Positions 14,467 through 23,664 of a stretch of 64,000 nt of DNA are shown piece by piece. The translations under genes and the position numbers were made by a program. Source of the DNA: Thecamonas trahens ATCC 50062. Lineage: Eukaryota > Protista > Apusomonadida. The notes under the pieces were generated by a model. The model was given only the letters and a program-made list of their open reading frames with translations, did not search any database and was not told the origin of the DNA. The stretch spans positions 65,688 to 129,687 of the forward strand of contig NW_013657642.1 of assembly GCF_000142905.1 (NCBI RefSeq). Direction: 5' to 3'. The first letter of the stretch is position 1. Each line of letters begins with the position of its first letter.

Positions 14467-14934
14467 GGTGCGGGGTGGGGAGGGGGAGGGGGGGTGGGGG
14501 GGGTGGGGGGGTGAGGGGTGGGGTGTGGCACCATGCGGTGGCTAACGAATAATGAATGGGGGACAATGGTTGAATGGCGGTGAGAAGGAATTGGGTCAGC
14601 TGAGAAGGAATGGGCTGTTGGTGGCAGCCTCGGCTGTAGGTCTGGCCAGACCAGCTCCTCGGCCATTCTGTCAACAATAATGTCAGTCGTTGGTCGTGTA
14701 GCCATGCATCGCCCCCCCGATAGACCAGCGAAGCGCAACCTTGTGGTCCACGATCGGTTCACTTGCAGTGGCTGGACTCTCTCAGAGTCTGGGACGGGGA
14801 CAGTGTCCGATGGCCATCAGTTGGAGTTGGGTCGTGAGGTTGGTTGGTGAGGATGATCGGCTGGTGGTCATGGCTTGGCCCTTCGACCATCAACTGACTG
14901 TGGTGGTTGGCTGCCTGTGAGTTAGGCTTTGCCA

Positions 14935-15367
14935 GCTGATCGGTCACCTGATCGGCCAGCTGATCGGTCACCTGATCCCCCCCCCATCGGTCGCCTTGCC
15001 GGTCTGCTGGGCGGCCAGCTGGTCGGTCACCTGATCCCCCCCCCCCCCCCCATCGGTCGTCTTGCCGGTCTGCTGGTCGGTCACCTGATCGGTCACCTGA
15101 TCGGTCACCTGATCGGTCACCTGATCGGTCGCCTGGACGGTCGCCTGATCGGTCACCTGATCCCCCCCCATCGGTCGCCTTGCCGGTCTGCTGATCGGCC
15201 AGCTGGTCGGTTGCCTGATCGGTCACCTGATCGGTCGCCTGGTCGGTCACCTGATCGGTCGCCTGATCGGTCGCCTGGTCGGTCACCTGGTCGGTCACCT
15301 GGTCGGTCACCTGGTCGGTCGCCTGATCGGTCGCCTGATCGGTCGCCTGATCGGTCGCCTGGTCGGT
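14935..15367. repeat. 12-bp minisatellite (GGTCRCCTGRTC)n with a higher-order unit containing a poly-C tract and ATCGGTCGCCTTGCCGGTCTGCTG
   Basis: Directly visible tandem copies; the longer spacer motif recurs three times (about 14985, 15052, 15170). Confidence 0.95.
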
Positions 15368-15474
15368 CCCTCTATCGGTCGCCTCGTCAGCCGGCTGGGC
15401 GGCCGGCTGGGCGGCACTTGGCGCGCACGGCGAAGGGGCACACACGACTCACCCACACCCCCATACACACACGC

Positions 15475-18400
15475 ATGGAAAGGCACGCGGCACTCATTGC
15501 CGCCACCCGTGGCGATGGTGCGTTTTCTGTTCCTGCGCTGGACGCTGTTGTCCGCGACCTGTTCGAGCCGTCGGCGGCCGAGCCCGAGCTGGCTGCCTCG
15601 GCCAACCAGGCACTGCTGGCCTTCCAGGCCTGGCCGGGCGCATGGCAGACTGTGCCGGACATTGTCGACTCGACCGAGTACAGCCCAACTCGGGCCATTG
15701 CTCTTGCTCTCCTTGACGATGCCATCGCCAACCCGCTCTTTGCCCGCCTCGTCCCGCTCCATCAGTGGGAGGCCATCGCCTCGTGGCTCACCGCCTTTCT
15801 CGCCGCTGCCGTCGCTGCCGCTGATGGCGCAAAGGCGGCCGCTGCAGACGCCACGCGCGCTGCGCTTGCTGCAGACACTGCAGGCTCGGATCCGGCCGGG
15901 GAAGCTGCCGACGCCGCCGACGATGCCCGCGATGCCGCTGCTGAGACCTCTGCCCTGGCCGCCAAGGCTGCTTCCATGGTCGTCACCCTCGCCGTCAACA
16001 AGCTCTGGCCGGCGCACTGGCCGGGCCTGGTCACCGAGCTGGTCCAAGGCGCCGCATCCTCGCGCCTTGCTGCAGTCACCAATCTTGGCATTCTTGCCGA
16101 TCTCGCCTCCGCCGTCGTCGCTGTCCTCGCTCCGGGCTCAGCGCGCATCGGCTCTAAGGCTGCCCCGCCCGTCGTCAACGCCGACCGTCGCGCCGCGCTT
16201 GCCCACCAGCTTGAGCTCGACTTTCCGGTCATTGTCCATCTCGCCATCGAGGCCGCCGCCACGCCCGACGACGAGCTCTCGCTCGCTGCCCTCGCTGCCC
16301 TTGCCTCGTTTGCAGAGTGGATGCCGCCTGCGCTCGCCCTCTCCAGCCAGCTGTTGGACACCCTCATGTCGGCTGCCGCCTGCCCTACACCCCAGCTGGC
16401 CGCTGCCGCTGCGGCCTCGGCCTCGCGCCGTGGCCTCCGGCACGCCTGGCTTGCCCTCGTCGCTCTCGCGCGTCTTGGCGATGCCACCGCAAAGCGTGCG
16501 GCGCAAACCGAGACCGACATTACCCTCGTTCGCGCCGCCTCCGACGGCCTTGAGCCCGAGCTCCAGCCAGCGCTGGTCGAAGCGCTGCTTGCTGCCGTCG
16601 CCAAGGCCCTCCCGCCGGCGGCCGATCTGCCGCAGTGGGTCGAGGCTGCGCCGGCTGTGGTCGTCCACATGGCGAGCCTTGCATCGGCCTTTATTGTGCG
16701 CACCACAGAGTTTGTCGCCGACGCTGCCAGCTGTGACGCAATTGCTCAGCGAGTCACCGCCGTCCACGGCTCGGCTGACGTCCTCACCGATGCCCTTGTC
16801 GCTGCCGCCACGTTCCTGGCTGCTGCCGTCACCGCCGGTCTCACCCTCCTCCGCGACGCGGCCGCCGCTAGCCTCGACGACGACGACACCGCCGCCGTCG
16901 GCTCGCTCGTTGTCGAGGCCGCCGCTGGCCTGCCTCCCGCCATCGCCGGCTGTGCTCCGCTCGGCCTCGACTCGCTGCTCCCGAACCCGCCCGCAGGCCG
17001 CCTCCTTACCGCACTCCTCACCGCTGCGCCGCAGCCCGACGGACCAGCGCTTGCGCCGCCTGCTTCGCACGCAGAGTCGTGGACCCTCCTCTCGCCACCG
17101 CTCTCGGGGAGCTACGAGCTCTCGCTTGCGCCAGCTGTAGCCTCGGTAACGATGGCGCTCGCAGAGAGCCGCAACACCGGCGAGGTGCTTGCGGCAGCGT
17201 CGGTGGCCATAGGCTCTGGCGAGCCGGACGCGGTTGTCCGGCTCGCGTGGGCCTTCACCTCGCTCGCCCCATCGGCGCCGTCGTCGGCTCTTGCCGCCCT
17301 CCTCGGTGTCCTCGCCCAGCTCGAGTGTCCGCCGCTGGACTCGGACTCGCACGCGCGGGTTTACTTTCTCGCCTCGCTCCTTCCAGCGTGGTGCGTCGCG
17401 AGCGAGAGCCTCGGTGCCCCGGGTACGGTAGCTGTCGAGCTTGCTCACTTTGCCACTGATGCGGCGTCATCGGCAGGTGCGGCAGGCCTCGCGCCGCTGA
17501 TTCGCATCGTCGCCTCTGCCGCCGCCAAGCTCAGCCACATCTCGTTCGACGCCGCCAGCCCGGTCCTCGTCGAGGCTTGGCTAACCCTAGCAGGCGCGCT
17601 GGTCCCCGCCACGGCGTCGTGGCCGCCACCCCAGGGCGCGCACATACTGCGCGACGCCTACTTTGACATTGTCGCTGCACTTTGTCGCGCCGCAAGCGAC
17701 GCCGGCGCCGACGAGGTCCGCGACGAGTTTCTAGCCGCCATCGACCACATGCTCCTTCAGCCCATCGATGTTGACGCGCTCACGGCCGCCCTCGCCGACC
17801 GCGAGCTCCCGGGCGTGCTCTCGGCTGTCATGCACCTCGCCGAGCTACATGCAGTGCTGGCGCGCGCGCTCGGCATCCACTACGCCGCGCTCTTTGAAGC
17901 CTACGCCGCTCCACTCACCAACCTCGCCCTCGGCCTCCACGGCCGGGTCGTCGACGCCGCTGCCTCCGGCTCGGTCGACGAAGCCATCGGCTCGGTCATG
18001 GCAGTTCGCTCGCTGCTCCGTGGCCTTGATGCAGGCCTCCGCGTAGTGCCGGCTGGCTTGCTCGCCTCGCCAGACCTGGTCTGGGGCGTGCTCGGCGAGC
18101 TGGTCGCCGTCTTTGCCGACGCCCCGGTCAACGCGCTTCTGCCCGAGCTCCTTGCGCCGATCGCCGCCATTGTCACCCGTGCCGGCGACTCACTCACACC
18201 CGACATGGTGTCCGCTGTTGCCGAGGGTGTCCTCGCCCGCGGCGCGATCCTCATTGGCGAAGACACCAGCTCGCTCCCAGAGCTCCGTCTGCCGCTCTTT
18301 GAGCTCGCTGGTAAGCTTCTGGCTGGCTGCATGGCCGCTCTCGACGATGGCGGCGTAGCCGCCGGCATCGAGCTCGGCCTCTGGGCCACCCGGCACGCTC

Positions 18401-18918
18401 ACCAGCCAGCGCTGATCAAGGTTGGTCTCAAAGGGCTCGCCTCGGGCGTCCGCGCCCTCGCTGGAGACAACGGTGAGGGCATCGGCTCGGAGCGCATGCT
18501 CGCGTTTGCGCAGGCGTTCTGGGATAGGTTGTGGAACGATGGGCTCGTCGTCGTATTTAACGCGCGTAACAGGAGCGAGCTCGCCGCGGCGCTCCCGCTC
18601 CTCGACACGCTCCTTGCTGTCGCCGGCACCGTCGGCTCGGATTGGCCGGCGGTGTCGGCGACTCCGGAGGCCACCAAGCTCGCCGAAGCGCGAACTCTCC
18701 CCGCGGCTGCCGAAGACGGCGCGCTGGTGGACGGCTCGCTCGCCCGCCACATGTATGCCGGCGCCGTCGAGCTTGTGGCATCAACCTTTGACTACCTCGG
18801 CGACGAGGACATGGCGACTGTCGGTCAGCTCGCGCTCGCACTCTTTGACGCCGACACGGCGCTAGAGACTACGCTGCGAGCGCTGCACGAGGGCGTCAAG
18901 CTCAAAGCGCTTGCGTGA
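15475..18918 (+). CDS. Highly divergent exportin-1 (CRM1/XPO1)-like HEAT-repeat protein
   Basis: N-terminus resembles CRM1 (LDAVVRDLF...ANQALLAFQAWPGAWQTVPDIVD; LWPAHWPGLVTELVQGAASS...NLGILADL). LPELRLPLFEL resembles the CRM1 C-terminal YPEHRxxFFxLL. The ORF upstream of 15475 is only translated minisatellite. Confidence 0.7.
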   Translation: MERHAALIAATRGDGAFSVPALDAVVRDLFEPSAAEPELAASANQALLAFQAWPGAWQTVPDIVDSTEYSPTRAIALALLDDAIANPLFARLVPLHQWEAIASWLTAFLAAAVAAADGAKAAAADATRAALAADTAGSDPAGEAADAADDARDAAAETSALAAKAASMVVTLAVNKLWPAHWPGLVTELVQGAASSRLAAVTNLGILADLASAVVAVLAPGSARIGSKAAPPVVNADRRAALAHQLELDFPVIVHLAIEAAATPDDELSLAALAALASFAEWMPPALALSSQLLDTLMSAAACPTPQLAAAAAASASRRGLRHAWLALVALARLGDATAKRAAQTETDITLVRAASDGLEPELQPALVEALLAAVAKALPPAADLPQWVEAAPAVVVHMASLASAFIVRTTEFVADAASCDAIAQRVTAVHGSADVLTDALVAAATFLAAAVTAGLTLLRDAAAASLDDDDTAAVGSLVVEAAAGLPPAIAGCAPLGLDSLLPNPPAGRLLTALLTAAPQPDGPALAPPASHAESWTLLSPPLSGSYELSLAPAVASVTMALAESRNTGEVLAAASVAIGSGEPDAVVRLAWAFTSLAPSAPSSALAALLGVLAQLECPPLDSDSHARVYFLASLLPAWCVASESLGAPGTVAVELAHFATDAASSAGAAGLAPLIRIVASAAAKLSHISFDAASPVLVEAWLTLAGALVPATASWPPPQGAHILRDAYFDIVAALCRAASDAGADEVRDEFLAAIDHMLLQPIDVDALTAALADRELPGVLSAVMHLAELHAVLARALGIHYAALFEAYAAPLTNLALGLHGRVVDAAASGSVDEAIGSVMAVRSLLRGLDAGLRVVPAGLLASPDLVWGVLGELVAVFADAPVNALLPELLAPIAAIVTRAGDSLTPDMVSAVAEGVLARGAILIGEDTSSLPELRLPLFELAGKLLAGCMAALDDGGVAAGIELGLWATRHAHQPALIKVGLKGLASGVRALAGDNGEGIGSERMLAFAQAFWDRLWNDGLVVVFNARNRSELAAALPLLDTLLAVAGTVGSDWPAVSATPEATKLAEARTLPAAAEDGALVDGSLARHMYAGAVELVASTFDYLGDEDMATVGQLALALFDADTALETTLRALHEGVKLKALA

Positions 18919-18924
18919 GGTGCG

Positions 18925-21489
18925 TTACGACGAAATCGATGAGTCTGAGACAGAGTCGTAGGTGTAGTACGCCTCGATGCCCGAGTCCTCGTCCGAGGCC
19001 GCAGCGGGGACAAGCGCACCAGCGCGCCGCAGACGGGTCTCGTTGTGCTCGCCGTAGCGTGGGCCGCGCCAGAGCGGAAGGACCTGATGGCCCTTGTGCG
19101 AGCGGAACTGCCTGCGGAAGACGCCGTCGGCACCCGAGTCCGAGGTAAATGATGAGTACGACGACTTGTCGGCCGGAGACTGGAAGATCTCGGCCGTGGT
19201 GTCGTCGAGGACGCCAAGAAGAGTGGCAAAGAACGCGAGGCCGACCATGATGTACAGGCAGACAAAGATCTTGGACGGCGTCGAGTTGGGCACAATCTCG
19301 CCGTAGCCAATGGTCGAGAGAGTGACTACCGAAAAGTATACCGCAGTCCCATACTCACCCGACTGCTGGATCGGTGGATCCTGCAGCTCCATGAAGATGG
19401 CGGCACCAACAAGATTGAGGATGACAAAGGCGAGCGTCATGACCAGAACCTTGGTGGCAAGCCGCGCGACCTTGCGCCGCCACACTGCCCGCACCGCGGC
19501 CTTTTCCTCGTCCTCGGCCCGCTGGATGGCACGGATGGCGGCGATGGCGCCGGCAGCCGCCTTGCTGGACTTAAATCTTGGCGCCGCGGCGCTCGATCCA
19601 CTCTCACCCGCTTCCCCGCTTTCCGATGTCGGCGTAAAGCCTGACGCCGACGACAGACACGGGCTTCTCGAGCCCGAGTCAGAGTACGATTCGTGCTGCT
19701 CGTCATAGGTAGAATCGGGCGGGGCCTCCGAGTCGGCGACCTTGAGCGAGCGCTCAAAGTCGCGGATGCGGGCGTCGCGCTTCTCCTGCAGCTCAAACTG
19801 GGCCTCGTCGACCTTGGACTTGGAGATGATGGCGATGGTAATGGAGACAATGAAGGTGCCGAGGACCGAGTAAACAATGACAAAGCCCTTGGTCCCGTCG
19901 TTGGTCGGCACAAAGTCGCCGTAGCCGACTTGCGAGAGGGTGATGAAGCAAAAGTACACGCCGTCACCCCAGGTCCACTCAGGCTCGTTGAGGTAAATGA
20001 GCGAGCCGAGGAGGACTGAGACGGCGAGGACGGCGACGGCGGCCATCATGTGGCGAAAGAATATGCCCGATGGGCCATACCAACACGCGCAGCACGGCCG
20101 TGAAGCGGCGCGGTTGTTGGCCGCGTCGATGTCGTCCTGGGTCAGCTTGCCGTGCAGCGCGTCGGCCGACGTCACGTACGAGGCTGCCGTCCGGGTGAGG
20201 ATGGCGTTGGAGACGACGCCGATGGCGTAACCGCGCGCGGCAAGGCCAAGAACGGTAAAGGGGATGAAGAGTAGCCGCGAGTTGTCCTTGGTGGGTGCAA
20301 AGTCGCCAAAGCCAACGGCGTTGACGGTGACAAACGCCCAATAGATGCCGTCAAAGTAGCGCCAGTCCTCGATGAAAGAAAAGATGGCGCCGCCGATGAG
20401 GACCGAAGCTGCCGAGAAGAGGACTGCCATGGTCGGCTCGAGCGCGTTGGAGACGAGTGAAGAGAGCAGTTGGCGGCCGGCATAATCGTCCATGACCGGC
20501 AAGTTGACCGCGCCGATGACCACGACCTCGATGCACGAGGTGCCCGGTAGGCAGCGGGCCGAGAGGTGAAGGGTGGGCGGTCCGGTAGTGAGCGGCTCGA
20601 TGTCATCATCAAGCACAATGCGAGCCTCAAAGTCGCGCCACTCGGGCGCAACGTCGGCGACGGCGAGAAAGGCAAAGCCGATGCGGTCGTCGGCGTTGGC
20701 CACGTCGTAGTCGAGCACTTCAAACTCAAGGATCAGCCCCGCATCGTCAAAGGCTGGTGCCGCCTCGTGCTGCTGGACGGCTAGAGCGTCGGTGTCGACG
20801 ACCCACACCTGATTCCACAGCGGATGGAGCGAGCGCGGGACGACGGGTGTTTTGTATGCGTGGCGGGCGCAGGGCGAGCACCACTCGAACCGCGGCAGGC
20901 AGCACGGGCCACCAGGCATGGCACAGCCATTGCGGCCTGCACATGCCACAGGCTCGTTCCGCAGCTGGACATAAGGATCGGCGGTGCCTGCCTCGGCGAG
21001 GCGGGCAACAACATTGTTGACGCGACGAGCAGAGGCATCGGCAATGATGGTGATGAGTAGCGAGAGAATAGCCAGGCCAAGCATGCCTACAAAGACGACT
21101 GTGGCCTGGCCACCAGCAGAGGTGGGGAAGATATCACCGTAGCCAACCGTGGTAAGTGTGGCCCAGGTAAAGTAGATGGCATCGAGAGTGGAGAGGTCCT
21201 CAAAGTTGGCGACGAGTGCGGCGGCAATGACGACGACAGCGACGAGTGTGACGACAAAGATGATACGCTTGCGGTAGAAGGGTGTATGACGAGCATCATG
21301 ATGGCGATGTACACCATGGATGTGTCTGTGATGGAAGTGGAACTCTCCATCAGCATCCACATACTCATCGTAGGCTGACGAGTACGAGCACGAGAACGAC
21401 GACACTCCGCCCAGCCTGCTCTGCTGTCGGCTCTTGTGACCGCCCTGCATCAGCGCCTTGGCTGCTCCGTAGTTCTGGTACCACGCCAT
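18925..21489 (-). CDS. Potassium channel with four tandem TM-pore-TM domains and a permuted C2 domain
   Basis: Four filter motifs (TTVGYGD, NAVGFGD, SQVGYGD, STIGYGE), each flanked by TM helices. C2 motifs lie between pores 1 and 2. ATG at 21489. Confidence 0.9.
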   Translation of the reverse strand: MAWYQNYGAAKALMQGGHKSRQQSRLGGVSSFSCSYSSAYDEYVDADGEFHFHHRHIHGVHRHHDARHTPFYRKRIIFVVTLVAVVVIAAALVANFEDLSTLDAIYFTWATLTTVGYGDIFPTSAGGQATVVFVGMLGLAILSLLITIIADASARRVNNVVARLAEAGTADPYVQLRNEPVACAGRNGCAMPGGPCCLPRFEWCSPCARHAYKTPVVPRSLHPLWNQVWVVDTDALAVQQHEAAPAFDDAGLILEFEVLDYDVANADDRIGFAFLAVADVAPEWRDFEARIVLDDDIEPLTTGPPTLHLSARCLPGTSCIEVVVIGAVNLPVMDDYAGRQLLSSLVSNALEPTMAVLFSAASVLIGGAIFSFIEDWRYFDGIYWAFVTVNAVGFGDFAPTKDNSRLLFIPFTVLGLAARGYAIGVVSNAILTRTAASYVTSADALHGKLTQDDIDAANNRAASRPCCACWYGPSGIFFRHMMAAVAVLAVSVLLGSLIYLNEPEWTWGDGVYFCFITLSQVGYGDFVPTNDGTKGFVIVYSVLGTFIVSITIAIISKSKVDEAQFELQEKRDARIRDFERSLKVADSEAPPDSTYDEQHESYSDSGSRSPCLSSASGFTPTSESGEAGESGSSAAAPRFKSSKAAAGAIAAIRAIQRAEDEEKAAVRAVWRRKVARLATKVLVMTLAFVILNLVGAAIFMELQDPPIQQSGEYGTAVYFSVVTLSTIGYGEIVPNSTPSKIFVCLYIMVGLAFFATLLGVLDDTTAEIFQSPADKSSYSSFTSDSGADGVFRRQFRSHKGHQVLPLWRGPRYGEHNETRLRRAGALVPAAASDEDSGIEAYYTYDSVSDSSISS

Positions 21490-21717
21490 GGTGGTGGTGG
21501 GGTGGGTAAGGTGGGTGTGGGTGGGTGTGGGTGGGTGGGGGTAGCCCCGGAGGGGGGGGGGGGGGGGCGGACAAGCGACGATGGTGTCTGTCTGGCAAAG
21601 TGCCAAGTGCCGATCCCGTCCCAGCCGTCCGTTGCCTGGCAGCCCACAACCACAGCCTCCTCCTCCCCCTTCTATACAACATACCATCTGACTCTGCAGT
21701 AGGTGGCCTCTACGAGC

Positions 21718-23664
21718 ATGGTGATGTCTGCTGCACGACGAGCAAGCACCAATTCGGCCTCGGCCTCGGCCTCGGCCTCGGCCTCAGCCAGCACCGCCTC
21801 CTCGGTCGGCCGCAGGCGGGAAGAGGACAGGCAGCCGCGGCGCCAGCGACGGGGGACGGGACAGAGTGGGCGGGAGGATGGGAGCACATGCGGGAGCGTC
21901 GTTGGGAGCACGGGTGGGATGGCGACCGAGGGCAGCGAGGCCGAGGAGGAGCTGCTGCGGCTGCTGAAGATGCTGCAGCGCGAGCGGGATGAGGCTGCCG
22001 CCGCTGGAGGCTATCGGCGAGCTGGCGAGCTGCAGAAGGAGATCAACTACGTGCTGGCATCGGAGCAGGCTGTGGTGCTGGAGAGCATGGCCGACGCCGC
22101 AGAGACTGCCGCCCGCAATCTGACTGAGGCTGCTCGCGAGGCGTACAAGGCCAAGGCCCGTCTCTGGGACCGCCGCATCGCCCGGTTCAAGGAGCATGCC
22201 GTAGCGGTGCTCGACGATGTGACCCGTGAGCACGAGAACGAGCTCGTCGCCGAGTGGGCCCGGCTGCGGGCGATGCCGTTCCGCCCGCGGTTTTCGGCCC
22301 GACTGCACCATCTGCGCAAGCGTGAGGCGACACTGGCCCGGCTGCAGCGGTACGACGAGGCCGAGGCCGTCCAGGCCAATGCCGACGAGCTAGAACGGGC
22401 CGAGCTGGCGGTGCTGAAGCAAAAGCGCGAGGACTCGCATGCCCGCAAGGTGGCAAAAGTCATCCGTGCGCAGCGAATTCGGATCGCCGCGCTGGAGAAC
22501 CGCATGCAGCGGTTAGAGGCCGAGGCGGTCCGGCGGCGCGAGGACGAGCTGCTCACGCTGATGCAGCGCGACTTTGCGGCCCGGTACGAGTTTGGCGTGC
22601 GAGCGGCGGCCGACCAGGCCAAGACTGCCCGCTTCTTCCACAACATCGACTCGCTCGATGAGCGCAAGCGCGGTAAGGCCACCATTGTCCAGCGCCGCGC
22701 CTACGACCCGCGGGTCTCCGCCCGCAACCGCGGCTCCTGGGGCTCGGCCAAGCGGGCTCGCCGCAAGAAGAGCCCGCCTCCGCCGGCGCAGCTGCCCGCT
22801 GGAGACTCGGCCGCCGCCGCCATGCTCCCGGACACCGAGTTTGAGCGGCTCATGGATGCGGACGACGACGACTTTGCGTCTCCCAGCACTGCTGCTGGTG
22901 GCTCGTCTGATCGTGGCTCGCTGGCGGATGTACCCACCTCGGACGATGGATCGTTGAGCGCGGTGACGGGCGAGAGTGAAGATGATGACGAGGGCGAGGA
23001 GAGCGCCGGCGCTGGTGCTGACGCTGGTGCTGCCGCCGGCGCTGGTGCTGACGACACCGAGGTTGACTTTGATCTCGACATGGACGACTTTGAGTCCGAA
23101 TCGGGTTCGGCCTCCGCCTCGGTCTCGGCCTCGGTCTCGGTCTCAGCCTCGGCCTCGGCCTCCGCCTCGGTCTCCGCAGTCGCTGCGACAACCGAGACAC
23201 AGAATGTGGCCGTCGAGGACTACGCGGGCTTCTCCGATGCAACCGATCTGTCATCCCCTGCAGCGACTGCAAATCCTGGCGTTACGGCATACGCGAGCTC
23301 GTCGACTGCCTCGTGTGACGTCGATGCCGCTGAAACCGCCATCTCAAGCGCCGACGCTGACGTGGCTGCAGGCACCACCGCAAGCATCGACCTGGTCGCC
23401 CTCGCCGCAGATGCAGACGCAGACGCCACGTCAAGCACAGAGCGCACAGTAGACCCGGGTCTGACTGCTGATCCCAGCGGAGCACCTCCGTCTCCGCCGC
23501 ACAACTACACGATGGACTCGGCTGCGTTTGAGAACTTCTCGCTCTCGGACGACGACCCGTCTCTTGAGTCCGACGCGAGCTTCCCGGACCTGGCAGCGTT
23601 GGCCAACAACGACGACAAGCGCAGGTTCTCGCTCTCGTCGTCCACGCAGAGCATCGACGTGTAG
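21718..23664 (+). CDS. Coiled-coil protein with long acidic Ser/Ala-rich tail (uncharacterised; start could be 21919)
   Basis: Long ORF with coding-like codon use and a helical region RPRFSARLHHLRKREATLARLQRYDEAE. Confidence 0.7.
   Translation: MVMSAARRASTNSASASASASASASTASSVGRRREEDRQPRRQRRGTGQSGREDGSTCGSVVGSTGGMATEGSEAEEELLRLLKMLQRERDEAAAAGGYRRAGELQKEINYVLASEQAVVLESMADAAETAARNLTEAAREAYKAKARLWDRRIARFKEHAVAVLDDVTREHENELVAEWARLRAMPFRPRFSARLHHLRKREATLARLQRYDEAEAVQANADELERAELAVLKQKREDSHARKVAKVIRAQRIRIAALENRMQRLEAEAVRRREDELLTLMQRDFAARYEFGVRAAADQAKTARFFHNIDSLDERKRGKATIVQRRAYDPRVSARNRGSWGSAKRARRKKSPPPPAQLPAGDSAAAAMLPDTEFERLMDADDDDFASPSTAAGGSSDRGSLADVPTSDDGSLSAVTGESEDDDEGEESAGAGADAGAAAGAGADDTEVDFDLDMDDFESESGSASASVSASVSVSASASASASVSAVAATTETQNVAVEDYAGFSDATDLSSPAATANPGVTAYASSSTASCDVDAAETAISSADADVAAGTTASIDLVALAADADADATSSTERTVDPGLTADPSGAPPSPPHNYTMDSAAFENFSLSDDDPSLESDASFPDLAALANNDDKRRFSLSSSTQSIDV

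What the first reader, a model, noticed from the sequence alone, without database searches (positions are those of the whole stretch)
18925..21489. Single-chain K+ channel with four pore domains (4P/8TM)
Seen: four complete TM-pore helix-filter-TM units in one intronless ORF (filters near 21140, 20310, 19925 and 19305). Known: K+ pores need four P-loops and are normally tetramers of 1P subunits or dimers of 2P subunits (K2P, TPK, TOK); four-domain single chains are typical of Nav/Cav, not GYG channels. Inference: this protein can form a complete, intrinsically asymmetric K+ pore as a monomer.
Basis: partly seen in the sequence, partly recalled or inferred. Interest (0 to 1): 0.85.

Follow-up and report, generated by a model that had tools for sequence, protein, structure and literature searches.

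The report
Single-chain four-pore potassium channel gene
This Thecamonas trahens gene encodes one protein carrying all four pore-forming units of a potassium channel, plus a rearranged calcium-sensor domain. It should therefore build a whole, lopsided K+ pore from a single chain, a layout common in protist data but apparently never described or tested.

Summary
ORF 18925-21489 (-) encodes 854 aa. It has eight hydrophobic helices and four Ion_trans_2 units (Pfam E 7e-60). A C2 domain lies between units 1 and 2.

The window is Thecamonas trahens. The public annotation already calls this one K+ channel gene. Its 93-nt in-frame intron is probably wrong, so the ORF is intronless.

The monomer reading is supported by prediction only. 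In the AlphaFold2 model the four units form one ring. That ring superposes over residues 72-771 on the pore of four-domain Nav and Cav channels (Z 18.4 on Nav1.7).

The architecture is not a one-off:
- Seven loci in this genome carry four units each, and none carries two.
- Two Tara Oceans contigs encode the same layout.
- Dinoflagellates have compact four-pore proteins that model the same way.
- A tree of single units suggests independent origins.

Nine searches found no paper on a natural 8TM/4P channel with canonical filters.

Expression as one transcript, K+ selectivity, Ca2+ gating and monomeric state are untested. Another first-stage note (s1-746484) flagged a four-pore channel elsewhere in this genome.

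The parts
18925..21489 (-). Complete coding sequence, 854 aa plus a stop codon at 18925-18927. It encodes the 8TM/4P channel with an inserted C2 domain.
   Evidence: It is identical to the annotated Thecamonas trahens protein P0001 except for 31 aa that the annotators removed as an intron.
21283..21489 (-). N-terminal cytosolic tail (aa 1-69). It is predicted to be disordered and has a His-rich stretch at about aa 50-67.
   Evidence: pLDDT is 30-47. The residues are conserved in P0002.
21268..21360 (-). A 93-nt stretch that the public gene model treats as an in-frame GT..AG intron (aa 44-74). It is most likely coding.
   Evidence: One search shows the gap in P0001. One search gives 71% aa identity to P0002 and codon-position identities of 77/81/32%. 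One search shows RNA-library contig X1 covering 21289-21506 without a joint.
21022..21282 (-). Pore unit 1 (aa 70-156): TM1, pore helix, filter T-V-G-Y-G-D (GYG at 21136-21144), TM2.
   Evidence: hit at window 21034-21249; helices 70-97, 101-112, 125-166.
20449..21021 (-). Cytosolic C2 domain (aa 157-347) between TM2 and TM3. It is circularly permuted. It starts at the 'DPYV' strand right after the TM2 helix. It ends with the strand 'IEVVVIGAVNLPVMD' right before the TM3 helix. It also contains a Cys-rich, low-confidence insert at aa 181-207.
   Evidence: Pfam C2 at 25.1 bits, profile positions 33-92 only. C2 folds at Z 9-10.4 over residues 166-317; the end of this region aligns to the beginning of the next C2 domain of synaptotagmin-7; the motifs are conserved in P0002, P0003 and P0091.
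20194..20448 (-). Pore unit 2 (aa 348-432). The filter is A-V-G-F-G-D (GFG at 20305-20313), and the S4-site Thr is replaced by Ala.
   Evidence: (hit at 20200-20406).
20071..20193 (-). Short cytosolic helical linker between units 2 and 3 (aa 433-473).
   Evidence: helices. One search gives codon-position identities of 61/61/37%, a coding pattern.
19810..20070 (-). Pore unit 3 (aa 474-560). The filter is Q-V-G-Y-G-D (GYG at 19918-19926), and the S4-site Thr is replaced by Gln.
   Evidence: (hit at 19819-20025). In one search four of seven relatives also lack a hydroxyl residue at this position in unit 3 (Q in P0002, G in P0003, M in P0091, A in L017); S, T and T occur in L013, L015 and L018.
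19474..19809 (-). Long cytosolic linker between units 3 and 4 (aa 561-672). It is helical at both ends, with a Ser/Glu-rich disordered middle.
   Evidence: pLDDT is below 50 for aa 593-640; codon-position identities are 51/66/33%.
19195..19473 (-). Pore unit 4 (aa 673-765). The filter is T-I-G-Y-G-E (GYG at 19300-19308).
   Evidence: (hit at 19201-19425). In one search this unit alone matches the pores of SthK, Slo2.2 and MloK1 at Z 11-13.
18928..19194 (-). C-terminal cytosolic tail (aa 766-854), mostly disordered.
   Evidence: pLDDT is below 50 from aa 775.

Best explanation
The gene encodes a K2P/TPK-type potassium channel in which all four TM-pore-TM units lie on one polypeptide (8TM/4P). 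The chain folds back on itself so that units 1 to 4 sit in order around one central axis. This gives a pseudo-tetrameric pore without any partner subunit. Because the four units are only 29-37% identical, the pore is intrinsically asymmetric. Units 1 and 4, which are neighbours in the ring, keep the filter threonine that forms the innermost K+ site. Units 2 and 3 carry Ala and Gln there. All inter-unit connections are cytosolic. The first connection is a C2 domain opened in its first Ca2+-binding loop. One half of that loop continues directly from the inner helix of unit 1, and the other half runs into the outer helix of unit 2. The acidic Ca2+ ligands are retained. I infer that Ca2+ and/or acidic lipid binding at this loop pulls on those two helices and gates the pore. 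Shown here: the four units, the single ORF, the conservation, and the C2 fold with its permutation. Predicted here: the ring arrangement. Inferred only: K+ selectivity, Ca2+ gating and the monomeric state.
For: Four Ion_trans_2 stretches and a C2 hit. Eight TM segments and four canonical filters. The AF2 model is confident in all four units. Its best structural matches are four-domain Nav and Cav chains, aligned over residues 72-771 (Z 18.4 to 13.1, 354-386 residues aligned). The same result holds for an unrelated compact four-pore protein from Durusdinium: pTM 0.82, Nav1.7 Z 18.6 and NALCN Z 16.5 over residues 34-418. The layout is conserved in two Tara Oceans metagenome ORFs and in a paralog. 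This genome has seven loci with four units each and none with two. The linkers and the supposed intron evolve like coding sequence. The C2 fold scores Z about 10. The permutation shows up as an alignment of the domain's end to the start of the next synaptotagmin C2. The Asp motifs 'DPYV', 'DYD..DD' and 'NLPVMD' are conserved.
Against: There is no experimental evidence of any kind. AlphaFold2 has learned tetrameric K+ pores and may pack any four such units into a ring. I had no coordinates, so the pore geometry, the handedness and the position of the C2 domain were not inspected directly. RNA evidence is three short contigs from RNA libraries, not one transcript, and DNA carry-over in those libraries cannot be excluded. 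Two of the four S4-site threonines are missing, so selectivity may be weaker than in canonical channels. The long linkers would also allow inter-chain assemblies.
Confidence: 0.72

Rival explanations
1. The chain does not work as a monomer. Two or more chains assemble, for example each giving units 1-2 to one pore and units 3-4 to a second. Alternatively, a dimer uses only some units, as concatenated channel constructs sometimes do.
For: Two of the three inter-unit connections are long (191 and 112 aa). The unit 2-3 pair with its 41-aa linker resembles an ordinary two-pore subunit, and many two-pore relatives align best to aa 354-573. Nothing tested here excludes such assemblies.
Against: The monomer model closes a full ring with good confidence. 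Compact relatives with linkers of about 10-30 aa between all units cannot easily swap units, yet they model the same way. This genome has four-unit loci only and no two-unit loci, which suggests that four is the functional number.
Confidence: 0.15
2. It is a pseudo-tetramer but not a K+-selective channel. It could be a weakly selective cation channel, or a Trk/HKT-like transporter, because the S4 site is incomplete and the pore is asymmetric.
For: Thr is replaced by Ala in unit 2 and by Gln in unit 3. Unit 3 also lacks Thr in several relatives. Single-chain four-MPM proteins of the Trk/Ktr/HKT type act as transporters or low-selectivity channels (my own knowledge; review hits).
Against: All four units keep the full x-V/I-G-Y/F-G-D/E signature, whose backbone carbonyls form sites S1-S3. 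There was no Pfam TrkH hit even at E up to 1. The nearest sequence relatives are TPK/K2P-type channels.
Confidence: 0.1
3. It is a gene-model or assembly artefact, in which two adjacent two-pore genes are read as one.
For: In a genome with 64% G+C, long open frames arise more easily by chance. No single RNA contig spans the gene.
Against: There is no stop codon in 2,562 nt. The linkers show third-position-biased divergence from the Tara homolog. The same collinear ORF occurs in two independent metagenome assemblies and in a paralog. The public annotation also makes one gene.
Confidence: 0.03

Closest known systems
Two-pore-domain K+ channels (animal K2P/KCNK, plant TPK/KCO, protist two-pore channels with EF-hands)
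   Same: They share the same pore module (Pfam Ion_trans_2) and the same 2TM-P units with TxGYGD-type filters. They are the nearest sequence relatives. Foldseek's best hits are K2P chains, but these cover only two units. Some protist two-pore relatives (P0009, P0012, P0025) carry the same permuted C2 domain directly before their first TM helix.
   Different: This protein has four units per chain instead of two, so no dimer is needed. It has no extracellular cap helix, because the TM1 to pore-helix loop is only about 3 residues. It has no EF-hand hit. The C2 domain lies between units rather than at a terminus.
CNGK, the K+-selective cyclic-nucleotide-gated channel of sperm and choanoflagellates
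   Same: One polypeptide carries four homologous repeats, each with a GYG or GFG filter, and forms a pseudo-tetrameric K+ pore (PMC4749565).
   Different: CNGK repeats are 6TM with S1-S4 and a CNBD each, 24TM in all. Here each repeat is a bare 2TM-P unit, 8TM in all. There is no voltage-sensor-like domain and no CNBD, and there is one C2 domain. It belongs to a different branch of the superfamily.
Trk/Ktr/HKT superfamily of K+ transporters
   Same: A single chain has four M1-P-M2 units (8TM) around one pore. This is the only established natural 8TM/4P layout (my own knowledge; review hits).
   Different: Those P-loops are degenerate, usually with one Gly per loop. They match Pfam TrkH, not Ion_trans_2, and they have an intramembrane gate loop. 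Here there was no TrkH hit at E up to 1, and all four filters are canonical.
Four-domain Nav/Cav/NALCN channels
   Same: They are the best structural matches to the whole pore module, aligned unit by unit in the same order.
   Different: Sequence identity is only 10-12%. They have 24TM with voltage sensors and non-K+ filters (DEKA or EEEE type). The resemblance is one of architecture, not of family membership.
Fungal TOK1 (8TM/2P)
   Same: It has eight TM helices and tandem pore units of the same Pfam family. Fungal TOK proteins appear among the hits (P0021, P0022).
   Different: TOK has only two pore units and four extra N-terminal helices, and it dimerises.

Membership tests
Ion_trans_2 pore-module superfamily (PF07885) | Match to the Pfam model above the gathering score | tested here: met
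   199.3 bits against a cut-off of 22.5, in four stretches. Four separate six-frame hits of 50-66 bits.
Ion_trans_2 pore-module superfamily (PF07885) | An outer helix, pore helix, T/S-x-G-Y/F-G filter and inner helix in each unit | tested here: met
   The filter Thr is replaced in units 2 (Ala) and 3 (Gln).
K2P / TPK two-pore-domain channels | Exactly two pore units per subunit, with the channel forming as a dimer | tested here: not met
   There are four units per chain. The monomer model closes the ring. The oligomeric state itself cannot be tested here.
K2P (animal KCNK) | Extracellular cap helices between M1 and P1 | tested here: not met
   In the model, helix 70-97 is followed by the pore helix 101-112, which leaves no room for a cap.
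Plant TPK/KCO ('calcium-activated outward-rectifying', the public name of this protein) | C-terminal EF-hands and a 14-3-3 site | tested here: not met
   No EF-hand family appears in the Pfam scan at E up to 1. The 14-3-3 motif was not searched for.
Trk/Ktr/HKT (SKT) transporters | One chain with four M-P-M units | tested here: met
   This is a shared architecture only.
Trk/Ktr/HKT (SKT) transporters | Sequence membership (Pfam TrkH) and degenerate single-Gly P-loops | tested here: not met
   No TrkH hit at E up to 1. All four units carry the full GYG or GFG signature.
CNGK / four-repeat 6TM channels | Four repeats with GYG-type filters on one chain | tested here: met
   The family definition is taken from PMC4749565.
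CNGK / four-repeat 6TM channels | S1-S4 segments and a CNBD in each repeat | tested here: not met
   There are only eight hydrophobic helices and no cNMP-binding hit.
C2 domain (PF00168) | Pfam match above the cut-off and the eight-stranded beta-sandwich fold | tested here: met
   25.1 bits against a cut-off of 22. VIA Z values of 9-10.4 to E-Syt1, Itch, Munc13 and cPLA2 C2 domains over residues 166-317.
C2 domain (PF00168) | Canonical strand order (topology I or II), in which the 'LxVxVxxAxNLP..D' strand directly precedes 'DPYV' | tested here: not met
   'DPYV' is at aa 171-174, at the domain's start. The 'IEVVVIGAVNLPVMD' strand is at aa 320-334, at its end. That end aligns to the start of the next C2 domain in synaptotagmin-7. 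The Pfam hit covers profile positions 33-92 only.
C2 domain (PF00168) | Acidic Ca2+ ligands in loops 1 and 3 | tested here: inconclusive
   Asp residues are present in the expected motifs: 'DPYV' (aa 171), 'LDYD..ADD' (aa 259-271) and 'PVMD(D)' (aa 334-335). They are conserved in P0002, P0003 and P0091. Binding itself was not tested.

The most novel reading that the evidence does not exclude
Natural 8TM/4P potassium channels with canonical filters form an unrecognised, recurrent class that arose several times from two-pore ancestors (apusomonads, dinoflagellates, other protists). In Thecamonas they replace two-pore channels altogether. The apusomonad branch adds a gating device not seen before: a C2 domain cut open in its first Ca2+-binding loop, with the two half-loops fused to the inner helix of unit 1 and the outer helix of unit 2. 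Ca2+ or lipid binding would then close the loop and act mechanically on one side of an intrinsically asymmetric pore.
Probability: 0.35. Interest if true: 0.78.

Novelty: new variant of a known kind. Interest (0 to 1): 0.62.

Why it matters
Textbooks describe K+ pores as tetramers of one-pore subunits or dimers of two-pore subunits. A natural single chain with four 2TM-P units completes the 1P, 2P, 4P series that is usually shown only for Nav and Cav channels.

It also offers a genetically encoded asymmetric K+ pore. Each of the four filter strands, inner helices and linkers can be changed independently without building artificial concatemers. That is useful for questions of filter symmetry, C-type inactivation and subunit cooperativity.

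Repeated independent origins would indicate selection for fixed stoichiometry and asymmetry. The permuted C2 domain, wired into two pore helices, is a candidate new way of coupling Ca2+ or lipid to a gate.

On the practical side, public annotations name these proteins 'TPK' or 'calcium-activated outward-rectifying channel', which hides the architecture.

Tried and rejected
- **ESM Atlas.** No usable hit.
- **Profile word search with alignment A1.** The candidate list was swamped by prokaryotic one-pore channels and added nothing.
- **Foldseek against PDB.** Only K2P chains covering two units, at E 4e-3 or worse, so it could not test the ring. VIA-align against all representative chains was needed.
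- **RNA evidence.** Only two metatranscriptome runs hold small parts: window 21062-21216, 21289-21506 and 19039-19246. Runs X3 and X4 are of unknown library type, and one contig from each (records 4 and 7) runs off the laid stretch toward the neighbouring gene, so they are probably DNA. No contig spans the gene, and no joint was seen. One continuous transcript is therefore not shown.
- **Unit pairing within this protein.** I looked for a 1~3 / 2~4 pattern that would show a simple duplication of a two-pore gene. The units are about equally distant (29-37%), so this gene's own history stays unresolved.
- **Upstream ATG at 21687.** Rejected. The extra 66 aa are low-complexity, are absent from P0001 and P0002, and overlap the divergent promoter region.
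- **Type-II C2 topology as an explanation for the permutation.** Rejected. Both known topologies keep 'LxVxV..NLP..D' directly before 'DPYV', whereas here the two are at opposite ends of the domain. The statement about the two known topologies is my own knowledge.
- **Complex prediction.** Not used. Two full chains exceed its size limit, and no binding claim between separate proteins is made.
- **Spliced models.** The spliced form P0001 came from the database.
Full report
**What is there**

Window 18925-21687 (-) is a single open frame. The in-frame ATG at 21489 sits in a good context (caccATGg). It is also the start used by the public protein and by the closest homolog. I therefore take 18925-21489 as the gene, encoding 854 aa.

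- Pfam finds Ion_trans_2 at 199 bits (E 7e-60) in four stretches, and a C2 domain at 25.1 bits against a cut-off of 22.
- A hydropathy scan finds eight strong hydrophobic segments that bracket four filter motifs.
- The filters are TVGYGD (aa 114-119, GYG at window 21144), AVGFGD (GFG at 20313), QVGYGD (GYG at 19926) and TIGYGE (GYG at 19308).
- The four units are 29-37% identical to one another, so the repeats are old.
- Each unit has two helices, so every connector is on the same side of the membrane. That side is cytosolic, as expected for a C2 domain.

**Whose gene it is**

The ORF is identical to 'calcium-activated outward-rectifying potassium ion channel [Thecamonas trahens ATCC 50062]' (P0001, 823 aa), except that the annotators removed 31 aa. 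The removed stretch, 21268-21360, begins with GT and ends with AG. I think this intron is wrong, for two reasons.

- Against the homologous gene on a Tara Oceans contig (P0002, locus L019), these 31 codons are 71% identical in protein. Their identities at codon positions 1, 2 and 3 are 77, 81 and 32%. That is the pattern of a constrained coding sequence.
- A contig from a marine metatranscriptome covers 21289-21506 without a joint.

**One gene or two**

- There is no stop codon in 2,562 nt.
- The two linkers where a split could lie also show third-position-biased divergence. The values are 61/61/37% for aa 433-473 and 51/66/33% for aa 561-672.
- The same order, unit 1, C2, unit 2, unit 3, unit 4, is found in four places: P0002 (827 aa, a complete ORF on a 2.9-kb Tara contig), P0091 (793 aa, another Tara sample), the Thecamonas paralog P0003 (AMSG_07212), and, N-terminally truncated, P0004.
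- RNA evidence is thin. Three short contigs from two RNA libraries match at 99% or better, at both ends of the gene, but none spans it.
- A continuous transcript is therefore inferred, not shown.

**Can one chain make a pore**

AlphaFold2 was run on an alignment of 26 four-pore proteins. The model has mean pLDDT 71 and pTM 0.60. The four units score 80-95, and the low-confidence parts are the tails, a Cys-rich insert and the middle of the long linker. I could not read coordinates, so I tested the arrangement by structure search.

- Against 48,161 representative PDB chains, the six best whole-model matches are all single-chain four-domain channels.
- These are Nav1.7 (Z 18.4, rmsd 4.0 A, 371 residues), Nav1.5, Cav3.1, Cav2.2, Cav1.2 and Cav1.1 (Z 14.9 to 13.1).
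- Each aligns from model residue 71 or 72 to 771-777.
- A sequential alignment of about 370 residues is only possible if units 1-4 occupy the places of domains I-IV around one axis.
- K2P chains match only two units, mainly units 2-3.

AlphaFold has learned tetrameric pores and may favour that packing.

**Is it a one-off**

No.

- A six-frame scan of the whole assembly with PF07885 gives 45 hits. Twenty-eight of them fall in seven loci with four units each: this gene, C31 (P0003), two on C14, C29, C27 and C126. The other 17 are single.
- One C14 locus shows a fifth unit. It lies in a direct repeat at 775-nt spacing, 100% identical over the 300 nt reported, so it is probably an assembly artefact or a very recent event.
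- No locus has two units. In this organism the two-pore class appears to be replaced by four-pore genes.
- Another first-stage note (s1-746484) had flagged one of these loci.

Among the 237 proteins fetched at that point, 40 have four or more units by an HMM built from this protein's units. This sample is biased by the four-pore query.

- Named examples are dinoflagellate proteins of 421-512 aa, from Symbiodinium natans and sp. CCMP2456, Effrenium voratum, Durusdinium trenchii, Breviolum (symbB, EukProt) and Polarella glacialis. They are labelled 'TPKA', 'TPK4' or unnamed.
- The Durusdinium protein (421 aa) models at pLDDT 82.6 and pTM 0.82. It again matches Nav1.7 (Z 18.6), NALCN (Z 16.5) and Cav2.2 (Z 13.1) across residues 34-418.

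**Origins**

I built a quick maximum-likelihood tree of 150 single units (SH-aLRT support; units of about 85 aa, so resolution is limited).

- It groups dinoflagellate units 1 with 3 (support 92) and 2 with 4 (87). The same pairing holds in two environmental groups. This is the pattern expected when a two-pore gene duplicates in tandem.
- In the apusomonad family the units group by position across paralogs. The unit-2 clade and the unit-4 clade each have support 86, and neither sits inside a dinoflagellate clade.
- Unit 2 lies in a wider clade (85) with the first unit of protist two-pore channels that carry the same C2 domain in front (P0009, P0012).
- I read this as several independent origins, with the Thecamonas architecture older than its paralogs. 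The exact route for this family is unresolved.

**The C2 insert**

Residues 166-317 match C2 domains at Z 9-10.4 (E-Syt1 C2A, Itch, Munc13, cPLA2). The order of strands is unusual.

- The domain opens with 'DPYV' (aa 171-174) directly after the long TM2 helix (125-166).
- It closes with 'IEVVVIGAVNLPVMD' (aa 320-334) directly before the TM3 helix (338-374).
- In ordinary C2 domains, these two elements are adjacent and are joined by Ca2+-binding loop 1.
- phmmer shows this independently. The end of the region aligns to the first strands of the following C2 domain of synaptotagmin-7. The Pfam hit covers only profile positions 33-92.
- The Asp residues expected in loops 1 and 3 are present, and they are conserved in P0002, P0003 and P0091.

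This agrees with first-stage note s1-747546. That Ca2+ or lipid binding here gates the pore is my inference.

**Filter asymmetry**

The threonine that forms the innermost site is kept in units 1 and 4 but is Ala in unit 2 and Gln in unit 3. In unit 3 four of seven relatives also lack a hydroxyl residue at that position: Q in P0002, G in P0003, M in P0091 and A in L017. S or T occurs in L013, L015 and L018. This agrees with note s1-747652. The carbonyl-forming residues are canonical in all four units, so I expect K+ selectivity, possibly reduced.

**Compared with what is known**

The pore module is that of the K2P/TPK family, but the defining two-units-per-chain feature is not met. There is also no cap and no EF-hand.

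- CNGK channels are four-repeat pseudo-tetramers with GYG or GFG filters, but with 6TM repeats and CNBDs (PMC4749565).
- Trk/Ktr/HKT proteins are 8TM chains with four degenerate P-loops (my own knowledge; review hits). This protein has no TrkH signature.

Nine full-text searches and five papers read gave no description of a natural 8TM/4P channel with canonical filters. Recent work on K2P and TPK evolution speaks only of one and two pore domains (PMC13715775, PMC8619664). The library lacks most subscription journals, so a prior description cannot be excluded.

**Verdict**

- It is a new variant of a known kind rather than a new kind of system.
- The gene is already in public databases under a misleading name.
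- Its interest lies in three things: the recurrent but unremarked four-pore class, the built-in asymmetry, and the permuted C2 domain wired into the pore helices.

Noticed in passing
window 21268-21360 (-): The public gene model removes this 93-nt in-frame stretch as an intron. Conservation (71% aa identity; codon-position identities 77/81/32% against a Tara homolog) and an unspliced RNA-library contig indicate that it is coding. It encodes a conserved His-rich motif.
   Followed up: yes
window 20449-21021 (-): The C2 domain is circularly permuted, with the cut in Ca2+-binding loop 1. It starts at 'DPYV' and ends with the strand that normally comes first. The same permuted C2 sits directly before TM1 in protist two-pore channels with EF-hands (P0009, P0012, P0025).
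   Followed up: partly
window 18918-18925: The large plus-strand ORF 14929..18918 ends 6 nt before the stop codon of the channel gene on the other strand. The two convergent genes must therefore have overlapping 3' untranslated regions.
   Followed up: no
window 21490-21760: A short divergent intergenic region lies between the channel gene and the plus-strand ORF that starts near 21703. It holds a poly-C run and CCCAC-type repeats (21507-21578) that the read tool skipped as repeats.
   Followed up: no
L014:1385-2459 (G000 contig C14, about 316.4-317.5 kb): A direct repeat at 775-nt spacing, 100% identical over at least 300 nt, lies inside another four-pore channel locus. It gives an apparent fifth pore unit. 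This is either an assembly artefact or a very recent duplication.
   Followed up: partly
G000 contigs C14 (two loci), C27, C29, C31, C126: Six further loci carry four Ion_trans_2 units each, and no locus carries two. In three of them (L013, L015, L017) one unit lies in a different reading frame, which implies introns or frameshifts.
   Followed up: partly
P0106 (L021:1519-2667, L022:58-1206; JGI metagenomes): A minimal four-pore protein of only 382 aa has about 10-17 residues between the unit envelopes. IMG labels it 'Kch'. Its organism of origin is unknown.
   Followed up: no
P0269 (EukProt g12985.t1, 826 aa): This relative of the dinoflagellate four-pore channels has three detected pore units fused behind AMP-binding enzyme domains (PF00501, PF13193). 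It may be a gene-model fusion or a real chimera.
   Followed up: no
window 19915-20325 (-): The filter Thr of the innermost K+ site is replaced by Ala (unit 2) and Gln (unit 3). In unit 3 four of seven relatives also lack a hydroxyl residue at that position (Q, G, M, A); the other three have S or T.
   Followed up: partly
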